Assembly: GCA_002269645.1 (NCBI GenBank)
Contig: NIVC01000095.1
Coordinates: 124,001-188,000, forward strand
Direction: 5' to 3'
DNA from: Macrostomum lignano
Lineage: Eukaryota
DNA: 64,000 bases
The notes beneath the pieces are model-generated. The model was given only the letters and a program-made list of their open reading frames with translations, did not search any database and was not told where the DNA came from. Of this stretch, positions 1,431-59,516 are shown one piece after another. A program made the position numbers and the translations under genes. Numbering within the stretch: the stretch's first letter is position 1; every line of letters begins with the position of its first letter.

Positions 1431-3520
1431 GTATTTGTGCCATAGACACTATAGTGAATATCGTGCATTCGTGCCATAGACACTATAGTGAATATCGTGC
1501 ATTCGTGCCATAGACACTATAGTGAATATCCTGCATTTGTACCATAGACACTATAGTGAATATCCTGTATTTGTACCATAGACACTATAGTGAATATCCT
1601 GCATCTGTACCATAGACACTATAGTGAATATCGTGCATTTGTGCCATAGACACTATAGTGAATATCGTGCATTCGTGCCATAGACACTATAGTGAATATC
1701 CTGCATTCGTGCCATAGACACTATAGTGAATATCGTGCATTTGTGTCATAGACACTATAGTGAATATCGTGCATTCGTGCCATAGACACTATAGTGAATA
1801 TCGTGCATTTGTGTCATAGACACTATAGTGAATATCGTGCATTTGTGTCATAGACACTATAGTGAATATCGTGCATTTGTGTCATAGACACTATAGTGAA
1901 TATCGTGCATTCGTGCCATAGACACTATAGTGAATATCGTGCATTCGTGCCAAAGACACTATAGTGAATATCGTGCATTTGTGCCATAGACACTATAGTG
2001 AATATCGTGCATTTGTGCCATAGACACTATAGTGAATATCGTGCATTCGTGCCATAGACACTATAGTGAATATCGTGCATTTGTGCCATAGACACTATAG
2101 TGAATATCGTGCATTCGTGCCATAGACACTATAGTGAATATCGTGCATTCGTGCCATAGACACTATAGTGAATATCGTGCATTCGTGCCATAGACACTAT
2201 AGTGAATATTGTGCATTTGTGCCCATAGACACTATAGTGAATATCGTGCATTTGTACCATAGACACTATAGTGAATATCCTGCATCTGTACCATAGACAC
2301 TATAGTGAATATCCTGCATCTGTACCATAGACACTATAGTGAATATCGTGCATTTGTGCCATAGACACTATAGTGAATATCGTGCATTCGTGCCATAGAC
2401 ACTATAGTGAATATCCTGCATTCGTGCCATAGACACTATAGTGAATATCGTGCATTTGTGTCATAGACACTATAGTGAATATCGTGCATTTGTGCCATAG
2501 ACACTATAGTGAATATCGTGCATTCGTGCCATAGACACTATAGTGAATATCCTGCATTTGTACCATAGACACTATAGTGAATATCCTGCATTCGTGCCAT
2601 AGACACTATAGTGAATATCGTGCATTTGTGTCATAGACACTATAGTGAATATCGTGCATTCGTGCCATAGACACTATAGTGAATATCGTGCATTTGTGTC
2701 ATAGACACTATAGTGAATATCGTGCATTCGTGCCATAGACACTATAGTGAATATCGTGCATTCGTGCCATAGACACTATAGTGAATATCCTGCATTTGTA
2801 CCATAGACACTATAGTGAATATCCTGCATTTGTACATAGACACTATAGTGAATATCGTGCATTTGTACCATAGACACTATAGTGAATATCGTGCATTTGT
2901 GCCATAGACACTATAGTGAATATCGTGCATTTGTGTCATAGACACTATAGTGAATATCGTGCATTCGCGCCATAGACACTATAGTGAATATCGTGCATTT
3001 GTGTCATAGACACTATAGTGAATATCGTGCATTTGTGCCATAGACACTATAGTGAATATCGTGCATTCGTGCCATAGACACTATAGTGAATATCGTGTAT
3101 TTGTGCCATAGACACTATAGTGAATATCGTGCATTCGTGCCATAGACACTATAGTGAATATCGTGCATTTGTGCCATAGACACTATAGTGAATATCGTGC
3201 ATTCGTGCCATAGACACTATAGTGAATATCGTGAATCGGTGCCATAGACACTATAGTGAATATCGTGCATTCGTGCCATATACACTATAGTGAATATCGT
3301 GAATCGGTGCCATAGACACTATAGTGAATATCGTGCATTAGTGCCATAGACACTATAGTGAATATCGTGCATTCGTGCCATAGACACTATAGTGAATATC
3401 GTGCATTAGTGCCATAGACACTATAGTGAATATCGTGCATTTGTGCCATAGACACTATAGTGAATATCCTGCATTTGTGCCATAGACACTATAGTGAATA
3501 TCGTGCATTTGTGCCATAGA
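1431..3520. repeat. 34-bp minisatellite (CATAGACACTATAGTGAATATCGTGCATTCGTGC), about 61 copies
   Basis: Exact 34-nt period; contains the perfect palindrome CACTATAGTG; no unique spacers. Confidence 0.97.
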
Positions 3521-5499: not shown

Positions 5500-5757
5500 A
5501 AGCATCACCCAGATAGCAAGCATCCCTGGATAGCAAGAGTCCCTTGTTAGCAAGCATCCCTGGATAGCAAGAGTCCCTTGTTAGCAAGCATCCCTGGATA
5601 GCAAGAGTCCCTAGATAGCAAGCATCCCTGGATAGCAAGCATCCCTGGATAGCAAGCATCCCTGGATAGCAAGCATCCCTGGATAGCAAGCATCCCTGGA
5701 TAGCAAGCATCCCTTGATAGCAAGCATCCCTGGATAGCAAGCATCCCTGGATAGCAA
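5500..5757. repeat. 17-bp minisatellite (GGATAGCAAGCATCCCT), left part of an array split by the LINE
   Basis: 17-nt period; shares unit variants (GAGTCCCTTGTTAGCAAG) with the array at 9626-11880. Confidence 0.95.
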
Positions 5758-8700
5758 ACAACAACAACAACAGAGTACGCTGCCGGGTCGTAAAAAGCAA
5801 CGTCAGATGGCACGCTTCGAAGCTTGGGCGCGAACAAAGGCCGCACCGCCGGCAGAGTCCGGGGCGCCGGCGTCAGCCAGCAGACAGTCGACGTAGCGCC
5901 GTGTCCTCGCTTGTCCCCGCCGGTAGGGTGCCTGCAACGTAAGTAGCAGCACCTCCTGCACCGGCTCCGGACAGTAGGCCTCGGCGCGGATGACGTGGCC
6001 TGCCAGCTGGAGTCGCCGACGGCGCAGCAGATCGCTAGGACGGGCCAGGCCGGCGCGATGGTAGAGCGCCGTGTTGGTGACTCGCTCGTTGCCGATCTTG
6101 AAGGCGGCGCGCAGCAGGCCAGCGTGCGCCGCGTCGACTTGAGCCTCGAGCGAGTCTGTCAGCGTCCAGGTCTCGGCGTTGTATAACAGGACGGTTTCGA
6201 TCACCGCCTGGAACAGCGCCGCCCTCTGGCGGTCCGGTAGGGCCTCGGACTGCAGGACTGACCTTATAGAACGAAAGGCAGCCCAGGCAAGTCCTCGGCG
6301 ACGCCGCAGATCCTCGCGAACGTCGGGAACCAGACCGCCGAGGTAGACGAACTGCTGACATCTTGGAAGCTCACTCGCCTGTCCGTCAGCGCCTCGGCAG
6401 AAGATTGCAGCCTCGGTGTCGTCCGGCACGCATAGCACGACGGTCTTCTGCGTGTTGACCACCAGGCCGACGCTCGCCGCAACGGCAACCAGCCTATCCA
6501 GCTGTCGTTGGGCGCCCTCGACGGTCGAGGACAGCAGGGCGAGGTCATCGGCGTAGCCAAGCACGCTGAGCCGTCTCTCCGGTTGGCGTCGACCCACGCG
6601 TCGCCGCAGCAGGAAGCCGTCGTCGTTGGAAGGCAGAGCAGTCCGTAGCACCCAGTCAAGCACCAGAATAAATAGGAACGGCGCTAGCGTATCTCCCTGG
6701 AGCACCCCGGAGGATGTCTCGAAGAAATCCGATAGGCCGTCCGGTGTTGAGACAGCAGCCGTCGTGCCGTGGTACAGCGCCATGACAGCAGAAATCAGCA
6801 GCTCTGGCACGTTGTACGCACGGAGCACCTCTGGGAGCGCGTCCCTCACGACCGAGTCGAAGGCCTTCCTGAAATCGACGAAGATCAGGATGAGGGTCAA
6901 CTGGCGGATGCGCGCCTCCTCGATGACTCGCCGAAGAGCCAGGATCTGCGTCACTGTGCCGCGATGGGGCCGGAATCCGTTCTGCTCAGGCCGCAAGTAC
7001 GGGTCCAGCACAGGCTGTAGCCGCGATAGCAGCATGCGGTTGAACAGCTTCGCGGCGCAGGACTGTAGGCAGATGCCTCGATGCTCCTCGAGCTTGGTGG
7101 TGCCCGGCTTCTTTGGAATGGCGACGATGTGCGCCGTGGTCCATTCGTTTGGCGCCACCTCACCGGAAAGCACGCGGTTCATCACTCTGGCGACCTCAGT
7201 GGCCACGCAGTGGATCCGCAGCGCCTCGGTGGGCACCTCGTCCGGACCAAGCGCTTTGCCGCCCGGCGACTGCCGAGCGAACTTCACAACGTCGGCTGTG
7301 CTGACTGGGGCAACGTTGAAACTCTCCTCCGCCGGCAACGGCGTCTCCGGCGGCAGCCTCAGATTTTCTGGAAGCGGAGGGGGCGGCGCGTTGACAATGG
7401 CGGCGAAGAACTCGCGCAGCTCGTTCCTGCGCTCATCCGGAGTGTCGCCTGCCAGGTTGAGCGCAATGCGCCGCTTTCGCCCCGTCAGAGTGTTGATGAT
7501 GGACCAGGCCACGCGCCCTCTGGCATCGGGCCCTGCGGCAGAGACGGCTTGGATGGCGTCATCGACAGCGGACTGCTGCCGCTGCAGGTAGACAGCCGCC
7601 AGAGCCTCCTCCGCCTCGCGAGTTTGCCGCCCACTCAGACGGAGCCTCTCCAGATCTTCCCTCGCTTCGTCGATCGCGGGGTCGTCCTGCCAGACCGGCT
7701 GCCCGCGCTGGGCCGGTCGCATCAGCGGGACTGCTTGCTCCGCAGCGGCTCGAACTGCAGCGCTCACCTCCGCGTACTCGGCTCCTCCACGCTTGTCGCC
7801 CAGCGCAGTGACAAAGGCACCGGCAAAGCGACGTCGCGTCTCGGCGTCCCTGAGCGCGCGTAGTAGCGCCGCGGTGGCCGCTTTGGCGGACGGTAGAGCG
7901 GGTCCCGAAGCCGAAGGTCGCAGATGAGCAGTCGATGGTCGGACCGCAGAGCCAGCGGTGTAATGGTGCGGCAGTTGGTGACGCGGCGGCGCTCACGAAA
8001 GCGCACAAGCACGTGGTCGAGCTGTGCCAGCCTCCGCGTAGCGTTCCGGCCGCGCGCGTTCCGCCGCCTCCGCTTGCAGCCCACGAAGGTCGCGAGCCTG
8101 CCCGGTGACTTGCGGAATCTGGTGTTGGCCGACACCATGTCCTGTCTCTCCAGGAAGTCCTCTAGCGCTCCGGTGTTGCCGTTCTCGCGCGCTGTCACGA
8201 AAAGCGATCGCTCGGACCTACGCAGAACTGCGTTCAGGTCTCCGAGAATGACCACTGTGTCACGTTGCGCCATCTCCTCCACCCGCACCGAGAGTTGCTC
8301 GAAGAAGGCCTGAGCCTCATCGGAGCGGGTAGCAGGCGGCGCGTACGCGCAGAACAAACGGGCGTTCCGGCCGCGAAGCCGGACGTCGACCCGAAGCAGC
8401 CGAGAAGACAGGGAGACGCAGCGACAGCTCTGCTGCAGCCTCGGTCCGATCAGTGCTCCAACTCCTCCACGGCCTCGCTCATCCGCTGAGGTGTAACAGA
8501 GTGTCCAACCGGCGCCCAGGTCCTCACAGTGAAGTCCGGGGTCGGCTCTGATAGACACCTCCTGTAGTGCGATGACATCACAGCTGAGGTCGAGCGCTAG
8601 CCTCGCCAGCAGCCCTCTCCGCCATGTGGCCTTGAGAGTGCGGCAGTTCAGCGTCCCGACCCGAAGCGTGCCCTCTGGTACGGCTGGGGCTCGATGCTGG

Positions 8701-8945
8701 TGAGCCTCATGGTCCCCGGCGCCACACGGAAGATCCAGTTGGGCCAGCGCAGCAGCAGCTCGGCGGGCGGCGCCACGTTGCCGACCTCGCCAGTTTCGCT
8801 CGCGACGACGTTCGACTCGCCGACGCGCGCTCCGCTGCCCTCGCTTGGTCCTGCCGCATTTGGCCGCCGCAGCAGTTAAGCGCGGCTCTCCGCTCTTACC
8901 ACGAGGAGGTAGCGGCATTTATCTGCACCGTGGTGCAAATAAATT
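5757..8945 (-). mobile_element. Non-LTR retrotransposon (RTE-clade-like LINE), near full length, one frameshift
   Basis: Single long ORF with APE and RT domains, about 30-nt 3'UTR and (TTG)n tail at 5757-5772. C-terminal RRRRLQLAGHVIR and RRGQARTRRYVD motifs are typical of RTE elements. Confidence 0.9.
5803..8918 (-). CDS. APE endonuclease plus reverse transcriptase polyprotein, split by a 1-nt frameshift near 7860
   Basis: APE motifs GTLNCRTL, IALQEV, VILGDLNA, QLDHVLV, SDHRLL in ORF 7764..8918. RT motifs FVDFRKAFDSV, GVLQGDTLAPFLF, YADDLAL in ORF 5803..7767. Restoring one base after RRYY joins them (RALRDAETRRRFAGAF...). Confidence 0.9.
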
Positions 8946-9629
8946 AAGACTGCAAATAAATTAAGACTGCAAATAAATTAAGACTGCAAATAAATTAAGA
9001 CTGCAAATAAATTAAGACTGCAAATAAATTAAGACTGCAAATAAATTAAGACTGCAAATAAATTAAGACTGCAAATAAATTAAGACTGCAAATAAATTAA
9101 GACTGCAAATAAATTAAGACTGCAAATAAATTAAGACTGCAAATAAATTAAGACTGCAAATAAATTAAGACTGCAAATAAATTAAGACTGCAAATAAATT
9201 AAGACTGCAAATAAATTAAGACTGCAAATAAATTAAGACTGCAAATAAATTAAGACTGCAAATAAATTAAGACTGCAAATAAATTAAGACTGCAAATAAA
9301 TTAAGACTGCAAATAAATTAAGACTGCAAATAAATTAAGACTGCAAATAAATTAAGACTGCAAATAAATTAAGACTGCAAATAAATTAAGACTGCAAATA
9401 AATTAAGACTGCAAATAAATTAAGACTGCAAATAAATTAAGACTGCAAATAAATTAAGACTGCAAATAAATTAAGACTGCAAATAAATTTAGACTGCAAA
9501 TAAATTAAGACTGCAAATAAATTAAGACTGCAAATAAATTAAGACTGCAAATAAATTAAGACTGCAAATAAATTAAGACTGCAAATAAATTAAGACTGCA
9601 AATAAATTAAGACTGCAAATAGACTGCAA
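8934..9629. repeat. 17-bp tandem array (GACTGCAAATAAATTAA), about 40 nearly identical copies at the LINE 5' end
   Basis: Exact 17-nt period; one internal substitution seen (near 9490). Confidence 0.97.
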
Positions 9630-11880
9630 GCATCCATGGATGCTTGCTATCCCTGGATAGCAAGCATCCATGGATAGCAAGCATCCCTGGATAGCAAGCA
9701 TCCCTGGATAGCAAGCATCCCTGGATAGCAAGCATCCCTGGATAGCAAGCATCCCTGGATAGCAAGCATCCCTGGATAGCAAGCATCCCTGGATAGCAAG
9801 CATCCCTGGATAGCAAGCATCCATGGATAGCAAGCATCCCTGGATAGCAAGAGTCCCTAGATAGCAAGCATCCCTGGATAGCAAGCATCCCTGGATAGCA
9901 AGCGTCCCTGGATAGCAAGCGTCCCTGGATAGCAAGCATCCCTGGATAGCAAGCATCCCTGGATAGCAAGCGTCCCTGGATAGCAAGCATCCCTGGATAG
10001 CAAGCATCCCTGGATAGCAAGCATCCCTGGATAGCAAGCATCCCTGGATAGCAAGCATCCCTGGATAGCAAGCATCCCTGGATAGCAAGCATCCCTGGAT
10101 AGCAAGCATCCCTGGATAGCAAGCATCCCTAGATAGCAAGCATCCCTAGATAGCTATCAGCAGAGAGCTAGTTAGAACTGATTGAGATAGCAAGAGTCCC
10201 TAGATAGCAAGCATCCCTGGATAGCAAGCATCCCTGCATAGCAAGCATCCCTGGATAGCAAGCATCCATGGATAGCAAGCATCCCTGGATAGCAAGCATC
10301 CCTGGATAGCAAGCATCCCTGGATAGCAAGCATCCCTGGATAGCAAGAGTCCCTTGTTAGCAAGCATCCCTGGATAGCAAGCATCCCTGGATAGCAAGAG
10401 TCCCTAGATAGCAAGCATCCCTGGATAGCAAGCATCCATGGATAGCAAGCATCCCTGGATAGCAAGCATCCCTGGATAGCAAGCATCCCTGGATAGCAAG
10501 CATCCCTGGATAGCAAGAGTCCCTAGATAGCAAGCATCCCTGGATAGCAAGCATCCCTGGATAGCAAGCATCCCTGGATAGCAAGCATCCCTGGATAGCA
10601 AGCATCCCTGGATAGCAAGCATCCCTGGATAGCAAGCATCCCTGGATAGCAAGCATCCCTGGATAGCAAGCATCCCTGGATAGCAAGAGTCCCTAGTAGC
10701 AAGCATCCCTGGATAGCAAGCATCCCTGATAGCAAGCATCCCTGGATAGCAAGCATCCCTGGATAGCAAGCATCCCTGGATAGCAAGCATCCCTGGATAG
10801 CAAGCATCCCTGGATAGCAAGCATCCCTGATAGCAAGCATCCCTGATAGCAAGCATCCCTGGATAGCAAGCATCCCTGGATAGCAAGCATCCCTGGATAG
10901 CAAGCATCCCTGGATAGCAAGCATCCCTGGATAGCAAGAGTCCCTAGATAGCAAGCATCCCTGGATAGCAAGCATCCCTGGATAGCAAGCATCCCTGGAT
11001 AGCAAGCATCCCTGGATAGCAAGCATCCCTGGATAGCAAGCATCCCTGGATAGCAAGCATCCCTGGATAGCAAGCATCCCTGGATAGCAAGCATCCCTGG
11101 ATAGAAAGAGTCCCTAATAGCAAGCATCCCTGGATAGCAAGCATCCCTGGATAGCAAGCATCCCTGGATAGCAAGCATCCCTGGATAGCAAGCATCCCTG
11201 GATAGCAAGCATCCCTGGATAGCAAGCATCCCTGGATAGCAAGCATCCCTGGATAGCAAGCATCCCTGGATAGCAAGCATCCCTGGATAGCAAGCATCCC
11301 TGGATAGCAAGCATCCCTGGATAGCAAGCATCCCTGGATAGCAAGCATCCCTGGATAGCAAGCATCCCTGGATAGCAAGCATCCCTGGATAGCAAGCATC
11401 CCTGGATAGCAAGCATCCCTGGATAGCAAGCATCCCTGGATAGCAAGCATCCCTGGATAGCAAGCATCCCTGGATAGCAAGCATCCAGGATAGCAAGCAT
11501 CCCTGGATAGCAAGCCCTAGATAGCAAGCATCCCTGGATAGCAAGCATCCCTGGATAGCAAGCATCCCTGGATAGCAAGCATCCATGGATAGCAAGCATC
11601 CCTGGATAGCAAGCCCTATTAGCAAGCATCCCTGGATAGCAAGCATCCCTGGATAGCAAGCATCCCTGGATAGCAAGCAATCCTGGATAGCAAGCATCCC
11701 TGGATAGCAAGCATCCCTGGATAGCAAGCATCCCTGGATAGCAAGCATCCCTGGATAGCAAGCATCCCTGGATAGCAAGAGTCCCTAGTTAGCAAGCATC
11801 CCTGGATAGCAAGAGTCCCTAGATAGCAAGCATCCCTGGATAGCAAGCATCCCTGGATAGCAAGCATCCCTAGATAGCTA
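9626..11880. repeat. 17-bp minisatellite (GGATAGCAAGCATCCCT), right part, interrupted at 10150-10185
   Basis: 17-nt period; source of the spurious MLSRDACYPG ORFs. Confidence 0.97.
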
Positions 11881-11992
11881 TCACCCCCCGCCAGAGAGCT
11901 AGTAGGTTAGAACTGATTGACTTTTGTCAAAAGTGTACGTAAACTGTCGTTGGTTGCAGGTAGTTTAAAACGGAAAGTGAACCAGTTGTAGC

Positions 11993-12180
11993 CATGGATG
12001 AATGAATAGAATGGATTGCTATTCTGGCTCTGACTATTTTCGTTTTTGACTCTTTTGCATCCGGTTCCCCCCGTGCCTTTTCATTGGTTGATGATTGCCA
12101 TAGACAATTGTCAGTTATTTCAGTCAAAAACGAAAATAGCCAGAGCCAGAATAGCAATCCATTCTATTCATTCATCCATG
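11993..12180. mobile_element. 188-bp MITE with about 59-bp TIRs and 8-bp TSD (P-element-like or hAT-like)
   Basis: Termini CATGGATG...CATCCATG; arms differ by one base. TSD GTTGTAGC at 11985-11992 and 12181-12188. Confidence 0.85.
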
Positions 12181-12337
12181 GTTGTAGCACACTCTGTTAT
12201 CTATACTCAACAAAATTTAAAAAGTCGCCACCTTTGAGAGAGCGCAGTAAATTCCAGCTCAGTGTTGACTTTTGAGTGACGCAACTTGCGCCACGCGACG
12301 CAGAGTTGGGCTTGAAGAGTTCGCTTTAGCACACTAG

Positions 12338-21819: not shown

Positions 21820-21945
21820 CCCCTAGACAGAAAGAATCTACCAGACAGCAAGCATCCCCTAGACAGCAAGCATCCCCAGACAGCAAGCATCCCCAGACAG
21901 TAAGCATCCCCCATATAGCAAGCATCACCTAGTCTTAGCAAGCAC
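21820..21945. repeat. Short diverged array related to the 17-bp GATAGCAAGCATCCC family
   Basis: Unit GACAGCAAGCATCCCC(T)A repeated about 6 times. Confidence 0.75.
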
Positions 21946-58600: not shown

Positions 58601-59516
58601 AAGGAGAGAGGTTAAAGGCAGACGGACGAAACTCAGCCTAGGGGGCAGGCCCAATCTAGCTCAGCCAATGAGGGAGCAGTAAGGAGAGAGGTCAAAGTTA
58701 GTCAGACACGAGGTAAGAGGAAAACCACTCTTTATCGGCCTGGCTGGGGGCTGGAGCGTAACTTTTTTTGCTGCTCGCTATGCACACGCACTGTGGATTT
58801 GAGTGCAGCTTTGAACGGGGTGAAGATGCAAATTTAATCACAGGTCTGCTTGTCGAAAGCCAGATAACTTTGTTGCAGCTTCAAAAACTTTGCATAATCT
58901 TGTAAAATTTATTAAATTTTGTATCTCAAGGCAAGAATTAAGGAAATAAAGATAAGCGAATTTTCCCGAGTATCTGTGATATATCTCCACTAACCATTTG
59001 AGCAAATTTCTCGCTTCGAGTCACTTGCGAAGCGTAGAAATTAACAAACCAAATCTGGCCGTCTCCACCTTCGCCGATATTCCTAGAAACAGATTCGTAT
59101 CTTTCCGGGGTTAGTTTGACAATCTGAGGATCGTCGGCAAACAGACCGCCAGCTTTCTCAGCCCCGTGCGCCCGTTCGTACTGCTGGCCCTCCTCTTCGT
59201 GAGCTTTAATGCCGGCCTCGCCAAATCGATCGTAGCGTTCGCGTAGTTCGGGACTTTTCAAAACTTCATAGGCTCGATTTATTCGCATGAACAGAGCATT
59301 GGCTCCAGGGTCTGCTTTATTCCTATCCGGGTGTTTCTCCATCACGAGCTTTTTGAAGGCCTTTTTAATCTGTGCAGCGGTGGCTGTTCTAGACACGCCA
59401 AGCAAGGTATAATAGTCTTCGCTGCCAGATGCGGCCAATGTTGAAGTGCATAGCAACAACAGCAACAGCAGTGATAGAAGCAGACATGGCCGAATCAATA
59501 ATTTCAAAGTGTGCAT
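46661..59516 (-). CDS. DNAJC10: DnaJ homolog subfamily C member 10 (ERdj5, J-domain plus thioredoxin domains), about 895 aa; exons 59516-58995, 57953-57822, 55870-55352, 55020-54753, 53922-53779, 52809-52399, 50616-50477, 50304-50103, 48943-48830, 46897-46661
   Basis: Signal peptide, J-domain (DYYTLLGV...HPD...RAYEVL...RYDRFGE), Trx motifs WCPPC, CQPC and WCGPC, C-terminal ER-retention-like HDEF. GT-AG junctions are in phase except for one extra base in a T7 run in exon 5. Confidence 0.93.
46950..47800. repeat. 28-bp minisatellite (GGCTGGCCCAGCAACTGACACTCTGGGA) in the last DNAJC10 intron
   Basis: Tandem units with 26-28-nt variants. Confidence 0.95.
48107..48815. repeat. 28-bp G-rich minisatellite (GGCTGAGCCTGGGGTCTGGGAGGGCGGT)
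   Basis: 28-nt period. Confidence 0.95.
48960..50075. repeat. 23-bp minisatellite (TTTGGGAGCGATTCTTAGATCAC), homogeneous core with degenerate edges
   Basis: 23-nt period in 49300-49720. Confidence 0.93.
50710..52330. repeat. 36-bp minisatellite (GGAAATCATCCTATACCATTCCAAAATATCCCACTA)
   Basis: 36-nt period (12-aa repeat in the ORF track). Confidence 0.96.
53020..53665. repeat. ~19-bp C/T-rich minisatellite (CTCTCATCCCTACCTGTCT and variants)
   Basis: Tandem variant units. Confidence 0.9.
54036..54690. repeat. 15-bp minisatellite (GCACCAGGGGCTTTA) with a block of GCACCAGGGGCGCCA variants
   Basis: 15-nt period. Confidence 0.96.
55190..55335. repeat. Short ~19-bp repeat (CCCTCAGAATCTCCCCATC) in DNAJC10 intron 3
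   Basis: About 6 diverged copies. Confidence 0.75.
55960..57785. repeat. Compound (TCTG)n / TCTTAGTGTCTGTCTACTTG micro-minisatellite in DNAJC10 intron 2
   Basis: Fixed core with a variable number of TCTG units. Confidence 0.96.
58408..58830. mobile_element. Second copy of the 80-bp-array-carrying element (about 3 units)
   Basis: Flanks GGGGTTAAGAAT.AACA.CAAGCATTTAA and GGATTTG.GT..AG.TT..AAC.GGGTGAAGATGC match 16280-16875. Confidence 0.7.

What the first reader, a model, noticed from the sequence alone, without database searches (positions are those of the whole stretch)
5500..11880. RTE-like LINE in a 17-bp minisatellite with a new 17-bp array built from its own 5' end
The LINE splits one GGATAGCAAGCATCCCT array. 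Its (TTG)n tail joins the target at TTG(CTATCC), and the 5' side joins through GCAA microhomology. Between the LINE ATG and the host array are about 40 almost identical copies of a different 17-mer, GACTGCAAATAAATTAA. That unit contains the right arm of a hairpin just upstream of the ATG (TTTATCTGCACC GT GGTGCAAATAAA, 8918-8943). The new satellite thus has the same period as the host satellite and is seeded by element sequence. Inference: either the RT repeatedly re-primed in register with the 17-bp target, or the host array imposed its period on the insert, so the retrotransposon would be generating satellite DNA. The family may also target this minisatellite. Repeat-targeting is established for other LINE clades (SART/TRAS, R1, Tx1), but I know of no RTE case.
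Basis: partly seen in the sequence, partly recalled or inferred. Interest (0 to 1): 0.8.

Follow-up and report, generated by a model that had tools for sequence, protein, structure and literature searches.

The report
LINE with its own 17-nt 5' repeats
A nearly intact RTE-like retrotransposon has landed inside a 17-bp host minisatellite, but the second 17-bp array at its 5' end is a repeat that related elements elsewhere also carry, not something the host repeat imposed.

Summary
A minus-strand APE+RT LINE (5758-8943) with a (TTG)n tail splits one GGATAGCAAGCATCCCT array. Between its ATG and the host array lie 39 almost identical GACTGCAAATAAATTAA units. These overlap one arm of a hairpin that abuts the ATG.

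The causal inference fails. Three related elements fetched from unrelated environmental assemblies (L008, L014, L009; 56-64% protein identity to the window's RT region) start with homologous 17-nt monomers fused in phase to the same hairpin. The shared core is TATTT[T/G]CAGT[C/G]. All seven elements examined have the hairpin, with compensatory changes. Relatives whose flanks are visible sit in unique DNA. The host unit resembles the monomers no more than shuffled sequence does.

So the 17-nt array is an inherited 5' monomer array of this LINE family, and the matching period is coincidence. About 4% of the window is 17-bp-period satellite and 33% is tandem repeat.

The insertion itself looks like ordinary target-primed reverse transcription. 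It has CAA/UUG priming, TTGC microhomology, and a 17-nt inverted templated insertion at the 5' junction.

Monomer function is unknown. Each monomer carries a CAGT initiator-like motif, which is also a TTNCAG trans-splice acceptor motif. The window's monomer resembles the 3' half of the Macrostomum lignano spliced leader. Copies in the same genome could not be examined.

The parts
5500..5757 (.). Host 17-bp minisatellite GGATAGCAAGCATCCCT, the part 3' of the LINE. It ends at unit position 9 (GGATAGCAA).
   Evidence: TRF. Sequence. Phase analysis.
5755..5772 (-). (TTG)n tail of the LINE, reading (CAA)n on the + strand. Positions 5755-5757 are shared with the host unit and would be the priming microhomology.
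   Evidence: (TTG)n tails also occur in relatives L001, L002, L009, L010 and L011.
5773..5802 (-). Short 3'UTR of 30 nt between the TGA stop and the tail.
5803..7860 (-). C-terminal two thirds of the single ORF, containing the reverse transcriptase (RVT_1). It is in the -1 frame relative to the N-terminal part.
   Evidence: Pfam. Frame analysis. Alignment to intact relatives. 97-99% identity to Macrostomum lignano gene models P0015 and P0050.
7861..8918 (-). N-terminal part of the ORF with the APE-type endonuclease. ATG at 8918-8916. A 1-nt deletion relative to relatives lies next to 7860.
   Evidence: Pfam..
8918..8943 (-). 5' hairpin TTTATTTGCACC/GGTGCAGATAAA whose 3' arm ends on the A of the ATG. 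It contains one G-U wobble in the sense strand.
   Evidence: Fold with z -4.8. Conserved with compensatory changes in 7 of 7 elements. The sense strand folds more stably than the antisense strand in 6 of 7 elements.
8931..9621 (-). 5' monomer array with sense unit TTAATTTATTTGCAGTC. It comprises the hairpin-fused proximal unit (8931-8947), 39 full units (8948-9610; 38 identical and one with a single mismatch) and one 11-nt unit (9611-9621).
   Evidence: Homologous 17-nt arrays occur in L008, L014 and L009.
9622..9631 (-). 5' junction: AGTC (9625-9622) follows host GCTTGC (9631-9626). TTGC (9629-9626) is shared by the last monomer fragment and the host unit, and also flanks the 3' end, giving a possible TSD of up to 4 bp.
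   Evidence: Sequence. Phase analysis.
9632..9652 (.). Inverted copy of the adjacent host sequence 9655-9675 (21 nt, 100% complementary). It amounts to a 17-nt inverted unit inserted between GGAT repeats, 6 nt from the LINE junction.
   Evidence: Inverted repeats. It is the only + strand match among 141 host units.
9655..11878 (.). Host minisatellite 5' of the LINE. It contains an internal copy (about 10140-10190) of the array's own right flank (11871-11929).
   Evidence: TRF. Alignment.

Best explanation
A recently active, nearly intact RTE-like LINE inserted by ordinary target-primed reverse transcription into a host 17-bp minisatellite. The source genome is most likely that of the flatworm Macrostomum lignano or a very close relative. 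The GACTGCAAATAAATTAA array is not a product of the target. It is the family's own 5' monomer array.

In this family, the monomers are short 17-nt units. Each is a partial copy of the 5' arm of a conserved hairpin that abuts the start codon, followed by CAGT and a variable linker. The array is part of the transcribed, reverse-transcribed element and is inherited, with copy number free to change by slippage. The equal period of host and element arrays is a coincidence.

Shown:
- the homology and constant 17-nt period of the monomers in four lineages;
- the conserved sense-strand hairpin;
- the in-phase split of the host array;
- the microhomologies and the inverted templated insertion at the 5' junction.

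Inferred:
- the bottom-strand nick left a ...CAA-3' end that primed on the (UUG)n tail;
- the 5' end was joined by microhomology (TTGC) after snap-back synthesis on the host strand;
- the monomers act as repeated 5'-end-defining modules, either CAGT initiator-like start sites or TTNCAG trans-splice acceptors, so that a transcript beginning or processed within the array still carries downstream monomers and the hairpin.
For: Family trait:
- L008 (P0016) begins with (TATTTTCAGTCTTAGCA) x8.5 at 100% identity, then the hairpin and ATG.
- L014 (P0011) begins with (TATTTTCAGTGTTGACT) x7.5 at 100% identity, then the hairpin and ATG.
- L009 (P0006) begins with CATGATATTTTCAGTGC followed by a hairpin-fused unit.
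- The arrays stop at 144 and 127 nt at the contig ends. I infer that assembly k-mer length truncated them.
- Registered on the hairpin, the window monomer shares 13/17 with L008 and with L014, and 10/17 with L009. Only 18 of 5000 shuffles reach 13.

Hairpin:
- All seven elements have one, with z from -3.2 to -5.6.
- RNAalifold finds pairs changed on both sides.
- G-U wobbles favour the sense strand in 6 of 7 elements. The 5' arm is therefore transcribed.

Array belongs to the insert:
- The host array is in phase across 5758-9629.
- The 17-mer occurs nowhere else in the window.

Coincidence is affordable:
- Tandem repeats cover 33% of the window outside the LINE.
- 22 array segments of at least 200 bp have periods of 15-80.
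- The 17-bp host array is about 4% of the window.
- Host unit versus monomers is 8-9/17, the shuffle median.

No targeting seen: relatives' flanks are unrelated unique DNA.

Repair-type 5' junction: one inverted host unit out of 141, sitting at the junction.

Family tails are (TTG)n.
Against: - No other copy from the same genome could be examined. The relatives are 56-73% identical proteins from unknown environmental hosts, so subfamily-specific targeting or locus-specific expansion is not excluded.
- Two relatives (L010, L011) have the hairpin but no monomers. The array is therefore dispensable or easily lost.
- L009 shows only two units.
- A 4% coincidence is small.
- 38 of 39 identical units, and the two shortened distal units that each restart with GACTGCAA on the cDNA strand, fit some array growth during this very insertion.
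- The function assigned to the monomers rests on short motifs only.
Confidence: 0.8

Rival explanations
1. The host 17-bp array imposed its period on the insert, or the RT re-primed repeatedly in register with the 17-bp target, creating a new satellite. The family targets this minisatellite.
For: The periods are equal, 17 and 17. The junctions use GCAA microhomology. The array is extremely homogeneous.
Against: Homologous 17-nt monomers occur in three relatives from unrelated assemblies that show no trace of this host satellite. Host unit and monomer share no similarity. Relatives' flanks are unique DNA.
Confidence: 0.04
2. The monomer type is inherited, but most of the 39 copies were made during this one retrotransposition event. 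The RT slipped or jumped on a few template monomers, as it does on the (UUG)n tail.
For: 38 of 39 units are identical, against 93% matches in the flanking host array. On the cDNA strand the distal end reads 17-nt, 11-nt and 8-nt pieces, each restarting with GACTGCAA. R2 5' junctions with added, sometimes reiterated nucleotides are documented (PMC3774820).
Against: Arrays in L008 and L014 are also perfect over at least 127-144 nt, which fits long inherited arrays equally well. Replication slippage or unequal exchange after insertion would give the same picture. There is no direct evidence for the timing.
Confidence: 0.3
3. The 17-mer array is a separate, pre-existing host satellite. Either the LINE inserted at the boundary between two satellites, or the array is a locus-specific 5' transduction.
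For: The window holds more than 20 different minisatellites.
Against: The proximal unit is fused in phase to the hairpin exactly as in L008, L014 and L009. The host array is continuous in phase only if LINE plus array are removed together. The unit is absent elsewhere in the window and in JGI metagenome contigs.
Confidence: 0.03
4. The 5' end is an HDV-like self-cleaving ribozyme, as in R2 and some RTE elements. Everything upstream of it, array included, would then be non-element sequence created anew at each insertion.
For: Rfam drz-agam-1 hit at 8927..8854, 31 bits, E 0.0034. The P3/L3 segment ACCUCCUCGUGGU is identical to the consensus, and P2-like and P4-like helices are present.
Against: The hit is below the gathering score of 37. 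I could not form a P1 helix by inspection of the alignment. None of nine relatives gives a hit. The window owes the match to a lineage-specific deletion. Monomer linkers have no template downstream of the hairpin, so they must be inherited through the RNA.
Confidence: 0.04
5. Assembly artefact: the array or its length was generated by mis-assembly of long reads.
For: The genome is repeat-rich and hard to assemble (PMC5730564). There is one frameshift in a GC-rich run.
Against: The same architecture appears in three independent short-read assemblies. Both junctions are clean and in phase.
Confidence: 0.03

Closest known systems
RTE-clade LINEs (C. elegans RTE-1, BovB, and the schistosome elements SR2 and Perere-3)
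   Same: A single ORF of about 1040 aa with an N-terminal APE endonuclease and an RT. No ORF1. A very short 3'UTR ending in a short tandem repeat instead of poly(A). Perere-3 ends in (GTAA)n and carries a structured RNA device at its 5' end (PMC8501958).
   Different: Here the 5' end is a hairpin abutting the ATG, preceded by a 17-nt monomer array. I found no description of this in the papers searched. Phylogenetic placement in the RTE clade was not tested.
Mouse and rat L1 5' monomers (A, Tf and Gf types)
   Same: Tandemly repeated 5'UTR units that belong to the element, vary in copy number between copies and, in L1, carry the promoter (my own knowledge).
   Different: The units are about 200 bp in L1 against 17 nt here. 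It is a different clade. No promoter evidence exists here. The period is strictly conserved across lineages whose proteins are only 56-77% identical.
Repeat-targeting LINEs (R1/R2 in rDNA, TRAS/SART in telomeric repeats, Tx1L, NeSL and SLACS/CZAR in SL genes)
   Same: This copy sits in a tandem repeat. Its tail shares TTG with the target.
   Different: Relatives are in unrelated unique DNA. There is no evidence of a preferred target beyond a CAA-3' primer. One third of the window is tandem repeat, so landing in one is expected by chance.
Stacked relict spliced leaders at the 5' ends of dinoflagellate retrogenes
   Same: Tandem, fixed-length partial leader copies accumulate at the 5' end through rounds of trans-splicing and retroposition (PMC6050394). 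The window monomer aligns to M. lignano SL nt 17-33, and the SL's only AG lies 17 nt from its 3' end.
   Different: The monomers are not identical to the SL, having 2 mismatches and 2 indels. No full SL is present at the array's distal end. Relatives' monomers do not match this SL.
Satellites derived from transposable elements (reviewed in PMC6947457)
   Same: Internal tandem repeats of a mobile element are dispersed with it and can seed arrays.
   Different: Here the array is still attached to an almost intact element. No free-standing array was seen.

Membership tests
RTE-clade non-LTR retrotransposon | Single ORF encoding an N-terminal APE-type endonuclease followed by a reverse transcriptase, about 1000 aa | tested here: met
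   Exo_endo_phos E 6e-9 and RVT_1 E 3.5e-29. One frame apart from a 1-nt shift near 7860. Intact relatives are 1036-1049 aa.
RTE-clade non-LTR retrotransposon | No ORF1/gag. No RNase H or C-terminal zinc-knuckle domain. | tested here: met
   Only two Pfam domains are found. The ATG lies directly after the hairpin with no upstream ORF.
RTE-clade non-LTR retrotransposon | Very short 3'UTR ending in a short tandem repeat rather than poly(A) | tested here: met
   30-nt 3'UTR plus (TTG)5-6. The same is seen in relatives, with (TTA)n in L008.
RTE-clade non-LTR retrotransposon | RT groups with RTE reference elements in a phylogeny | not tested
   No reference LINE set was available in the tools. Named hits were uninformative.
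Target-specific (repeat-targeting) LINE | Independent copies lie at the same position in the same target sequence | tested here: not met
   The 3' flanks of L001, L002, L003, L008, L010 and L011 are mutually unrelated and are not the 17-bp satellite. Same-genome copies were not retrievable.
LINE with a 5' monomer array (as in murine L1) | Tandem units directly upstream of the ORF that belong to the element and recur in independent copies or lineages | tested here: met
   The window has 39 full units plus the hairpin-fused and shortened units. L008 has 8.5 copies, L014 has 7.5 and L009 has at least 2. All have period 17, a shared core, and the same phase with the hairpin.
LINE with a 5' monomer array (as in murine L1) | Monomers have promoter activity | not testable with these tools
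   Only a CAGT initiator-like motif is seen in every monomer.
HDV-like ribozyme (Rfam drz-agam-1) | Score at or above the family's gathering threshold | tested here: not met
   31 bits against a threshold of 37.
HDV-like ribozyme (Rfam drz-agam-1) | P1 helix pairing the nucleotides after the cleavage site with the strand 3' of P3 | tested here: not met
   The aligned strands UGCAGAU and AAGAGC cannot pair. No GCUCUU-like partner lies upstream (inspection of the alignment).
HDV-like ribozyme (Rfam drz-agam-1) | Conserved in related elements | tested here: not met
   No hit at E<=1 in L001-L004 or at E<=5 in L008-L014.
Relict spliced-leader array | Units match the host SL downstream of an internal AG, with a full SL at the distal end | tested here: inconclusive
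   15/18 alignment, with 13 of 2000 shuffles as good, and the AG register and 17-nt length fit. However, no SL is found in the window, and the relatives' hosts and SLs are unknown.

The most novel reading that the evidence does not exclude
The 17-nt monomers may be trans-splice acceptor modules that originated from, and are replenished by, the host spliced leader. The LINE would be read through from host promoters, SL-trans-spliced at a TTNCAG in its array and retrotransposed. The captured SL 3' half (17 nt after the SL's only AG) would become a new monomer. This would be a LINE counterpart of the stacked relict leaders of dinoflagellate retrogenes, and an alternative to the ribozyme 5' processing used by R2, RTE and Perere-3.
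Probability: 0.15. Interest if true: 0.8.

Novelty: new variant of a known kind. Interest (0 to 1): 0.42.

Why it matters
The striking claim, that a target satellite can dictate the period of new satellite DNA made by a retrotransposon, does not hold, so no new mechanism of satellite birth is needed here.

What remains is a modest but real addition. An RTE-like LINE family found in a flatworm genome and in marine and other environmental eukaryote DNA carries very short 5' monomers. Their 17-nt period and CAGT core have been kept while the proteins diverged to about 56% identity. The monomers sit next to a conserved sense-strand hairpin at the start codon.

This bears on an open question: how promoter-poor LINEs define and regenerate their 5' ends. 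It also shows a route by which minisatellite-like DNA is dispersed in a genome that is already rich in tandem repeats. If the link to spliced-leader trans-splicing is real, it would be a new way for a LINE to obtain a capped, defined 5' end.

Tried and rejected
- Same-genome copies. Exact-protein look-ups of the window's APE ORF and of the M. lignano model P0015 found nothing on record, so these copies could not be fetched.
- Exact search for the 17-mer dimer in JGI metagenome contigs: 0 hits.
- Protein-pattern scans:
  - metagenome contigs gave only 3 loci, none with a 5' end of this subfamily;
  - bacterial/archaeal genomes and viral contigs gave none.
- Degenerate two-monomer pattern: 0 hits in viral contigs. 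It gave 4 hits in bacterial MAGs. These are short AT-rich direct repeats in bacterial context with no LINE, close to the roughly 1 hit I estimate by chance.
- HDV-like ribozyme. I followed the weak Rfam hit and rejected it, as set out under rival explanations and the membership test. No twister, hammerhead or other ribozyme family appeared at E<=1.
- Host satellite as a diverged derivative of LINE monomers: rejected, because identity equals the shuffle median.
- TATA-like spacing in the array: the -30 sequence is not conserved between lineages, so I dropped the idea.
- M. lignano SL searched in the window and in all loci: absent.
- Literature searches for Macrostomum RTE elements, and for LINEs combined with SL trans-splicing, returned nothing.

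Full report
**What is there**

The region contains three period-17 tandem arrays:
- 5500-5757 and 9626-11878 share the unit GGATAGCAAGCATCCCT and the same variant units.
- 8934-9621 has the unrelated unit GACTGCAAATAAATTAA.

That second unit occurs as 39 full copies at 8948-9610. Of these, 38 are identical and one has a single mismatch. A hairpin-fused variant lies at 8931-8947. The unit is found nowhere else in the 64 kb, and shuffles expect 0.38 matches.

Between the arrays lies a GC-rich (66% against 41% for the surroundings) minus-strand non-LTR retrotransposon:
- ATG at 8918.
- An APE endonuclease and an RT in one reading frame. The frame is interrupted only by a 1-nt shift next to 7860, where relatives read ...PPRRYY-RALRD....
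- TGA stop at 5803-5805, a 30-nt 3'UTR and a (TTG)5-6 tail.

It is the only copy in the window.

Its RT region is 97-99% identical to fragments embedded in Macrostomum lignano gene models (P0015, P0050). The window is therefore most likely from that flatworm or a very close relative. The published genome is described as unusually rich in simple and tandem repeats (PMC5730564). Here, tandem repeats cover 33% of the window outside the LINE.

**The insertion**

In element orientation, the host array ends at ...AGGGATGCTTGC before the insert and resumes at (TTGC)TATCC after the tail. The host repeat is therefore exactly in phase if 5758-9629 is removed as one piece. A possible target-site duplication is at most TTGC, or that plus whole units.

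On the strand that primes reverse transcription, the host ends in ...GCAA-3'. This is complementary to the (UUG)n tail.

Six nucleotides upstream of the 5' junction, a 17-nt inverted host unit is inserted between two GGAT repeats. Positions 9632-9652 are a perfect inverted copy of 9655-9675, including its CCATGG variant. It is the only inverted unit among 141 in the window. I read it as snap-back, microhomology-mediated synthesis during 5' end joining. This step is an inference.

The array's distal end consists of an 11-nt unit and an 8-nt unit that overlaps the host by GCAA. On the cDNA strand each restarts with GACTGCAA. Variable, microhomology-based 5' junctions with added nucleotides are well documented for R2 (PMC3774820).

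Same-genome copies could not be fetched. Relatives from environmental assemblies could.

| Locus | Protein, identity to window RT region | 5' end |
|---|---|---|
| L008 | P0016, 56% | contig opens with (TATTTTCAGTCTTAGCA) x8.5 at 100% identity, then ATATTTTCAC-TGCG-GTGGAAATAT-G with the ATG |
| L014 | P0011, 58% | opens with (TATTTTCAGTGTTGACT) x7.5 at 100% identity, then hairpin and ATG |
| L009 | P0006, 64% | opens with CATGATATTTTCAGTGC followed by a hairpin-fused unit |
| L001 | P0002, 73% | starts at the hairpin |
| L010 | P0003, 68% | hairpin with no monomers upstream |
| L011 | P0007, 65% | hairpin with no monomers upstream |

The 144-nt and 127-nt array lengths at the contig starts of L008 and L014 look like k-mer limits, so the true arrays are probably longer. 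This is an inference.

When registered on the hairpin, the monomers are:
- TATTTGCAGTCTTAATT (window)
- TATTTTCAGTCTTAGCA (L008)
- TATTTTCAGTGTTGACT (L014)
- TATTTTCAGTGCCATGA (L009)

All are 17 nt and share 10-13 positions pairwise. Only 18 of 5000 shuffles reach 13 even with free rotation. The host unit matches them at 8-9 of 17, which is the shuffle median.

The relatives' 3' flanks are unrelated unique sequences after (TTG)n or (TTA)n tails. A second subfamily with a different N-terminus (L002, L004, L012) has an ordinary 5'UTR and no array.

**The hairpin**

All seven elements of the subfamily have a 10-16 bp hairpin whose 3' arm runs into the start codon. Free energies are -10 to -17 kcal/mol, with z from -3.2 to -5.6.

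The stems differ in sequence: GCACC/GGTGC, CACACCC/GGGTGTG, ATACGCC/GGCGTAT and others. RNAalifold counts pairs changed on both sides.

G-U wobbles make the sense strand more stable than the antisense strand in 6 of 7 elements. This argues that the hairpin acts in the sense RNA and that its 5' arm is transcribed.

Each monomer repeats the first 8-10 nt of that arm and then reads CAGT where the hairpin copy reads CAC. It is inherited rather than made to fit the target, because the linker has no template elsewhere in the element.

**Ribozyme lead**

Rfam gave a sub-threshold drz-agam-1 (HDV-like) hit at 8927..8854: 31 bits against a gathering score of 37, E 0.0034. Its P3/L3 segment is identical to the consensus.

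I reject it for four reasons:
- No P1 helix can be drawn.
- The match depends on a deletion peculiar to the window's lineage.
- None of nine relatives gives a hit.
- Cleavage there would remove monomers that are evidently inherited.

The alignment does show a conserved nested structure. UGCCGC at the start codon pairs with GCGGCA about 110 nt downstream, enclosing two stem-loops. Its meaning is open. Coding constraint on the GEPR...AAAAK peptide may contribute.

**How it most likely works**

Shown: the element carries a variable-length array of 17-nt units plus a hairpin as its 5' end.

Inferred: transcripts that start, or are processed, inside the array keep the downstream monomers and the hairpin, so the 5' end can be regenerated after retrotransposition. 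Copy number changes by slippage, either during reverse transcription (as at the tail) or during replication.

Two motif-level readings of the conserved core cannot be separated here:
- TCAGT/GCAGT resembles an initiator, with A as +1. The array's distal end begins AGTC right after the host TTGC.
- ATTT(T/G)CAG matches the [T/C]TNCAG motif enriched at M. lignano SL trans-splice acceptors (PMC8629364).

**Spliced-leader resemblance**

The window monomer aligns to the 3' half of the M. lignano SL: AGACTCAATTTA-TTGCA against AGTCTTAATTTATTTGCA, 15 of 18 positions. Only 13 of 2000 shuffles do as well. The SL's only AG lies exactly 17 nt from its 3' end.

Stacked relict leaders made by cycles of trans-splicing and retroposition are known in dinoflagellates (PMC6050394).

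Against this reading:
- The monomers are not identical to the SL.
- No SL is present in the window or the loci.
- Relatives' monomers do not match this SL, though their hosts are unknown.

I keep it as the most novel reading not excluded, at about 15%.

**Comparison and verdict**

By architecture the element is RTE-like: one APE+RT ORF, no ORF1, and a tiny 3'UTR with a trinucleotide-repeat tail. It resembles flatworm Perere-3, which has (GTAA)n tails and a 5' RNA device (PMC8501958). Clade placement by phylogeny was not done.

It works like monomer-bearing L1s in having element-owned 5' tandem units, but the units are about 12 times shorter and their period is strictly conserved.

It is not shown to be repeat-targeting. 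Landing in a tandem repeat has a prior of about one in three here. Landing in a 17-bp-period repeat has a prior of about 4%. That is an acceptable coincidence for a finding picked out because it looked odd.

The period-imposition and targeting inference is not supported. What remains is a new variant of a known kind, of moderate interest.

Noticed in passing
window 10128-10200 and 11861-11935: The host minisatellite contains an internal copy of its own right-hand flank (AGATAGCTATCA...CAGAGAGCTAGT...TTAGAACTGATTGA). Array plus flank seems to have been duplicated as a unit, perhaps because the satellite is the internal repeat of a larger mobile or duplicated element.
   Followed up: partly
window 11992-12181: An inverted repeat with 60-nt arms, 98% complementary, 70 nt apart, lies immediately beside the host array. 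It has a foldback or MITE-like structure.
   Followed up: partly
window 21820-21932: A short array of a 17-18 bp unit, CCCCAGACAGCAAGCAT, which is a diverged relative of the host unit and shares AGCAAGCAT.
   Followed up: no
window 8800-8918 (minus strand), and L001, L008-L011, L014: A conserved nested RNA structure starts at the start codon. UGCCGC pairs with GCGGCA about 110 nt downstream and encloses two stem-loops, with some compensatory changes. It overlaps the conserved GEPR...AAAAK coding sequence. The weak drz-agam-1 hit lies here.
   Followed up: partly
window 8948-9610 compared with the M. lignano spliced leader: The monomer aligns with SL nt 17-33 at 15 of 18 positions (13 of 2000 shuffles do as well). 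The SL's single AG is 17 nt from its 3' end, the same length as the monomer. Every monomer carries the TTNCAG trans-splice acceptor motif.
   Followed up: partly
window 5803-8918 compared with the rest of the window, and relatives L001-L014: The LINE ORF is 66% GC in a 41% GC neighbourhood. Relatives (54-67% GC) come from marine and other metagenomes, including a Tara Oceans sample. This points to a widespread lineage that is compositionally foreign to this host, possibly transferred horizontally.
   Followed up: no
whole window: More than 20 different minisatellites with periods of 15-80 bp cover about one third of the window. This is extreme even for a repeat-rich genome.
   Followed up: partly
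protein P0057 (M. lignano gene model): A gene model fuses a fragment of this LINE family to an N-terminal run of FLIIKSKVTR repeats, corresponding to a 30-nt tandem repeat. Other copies may therefore also lie next to tandem repeats in that genome.
   Followed up: no
L015 about 2900-3000 and L017 about 2700-2760 (bacterial MAG contigs): Three to four direct repeats spaced 17 nt apart and containing TATTTTCAGTG occur in bacterial context with no LINE. They are probably iteron-like repeats that match the degenerate pattern by chance.
   Followed up: partly
window 58938-59516 (minus strand): An ORF with a DnaJ domain (E 4e-23), presumably a host gene or exon.
   Followed up: no
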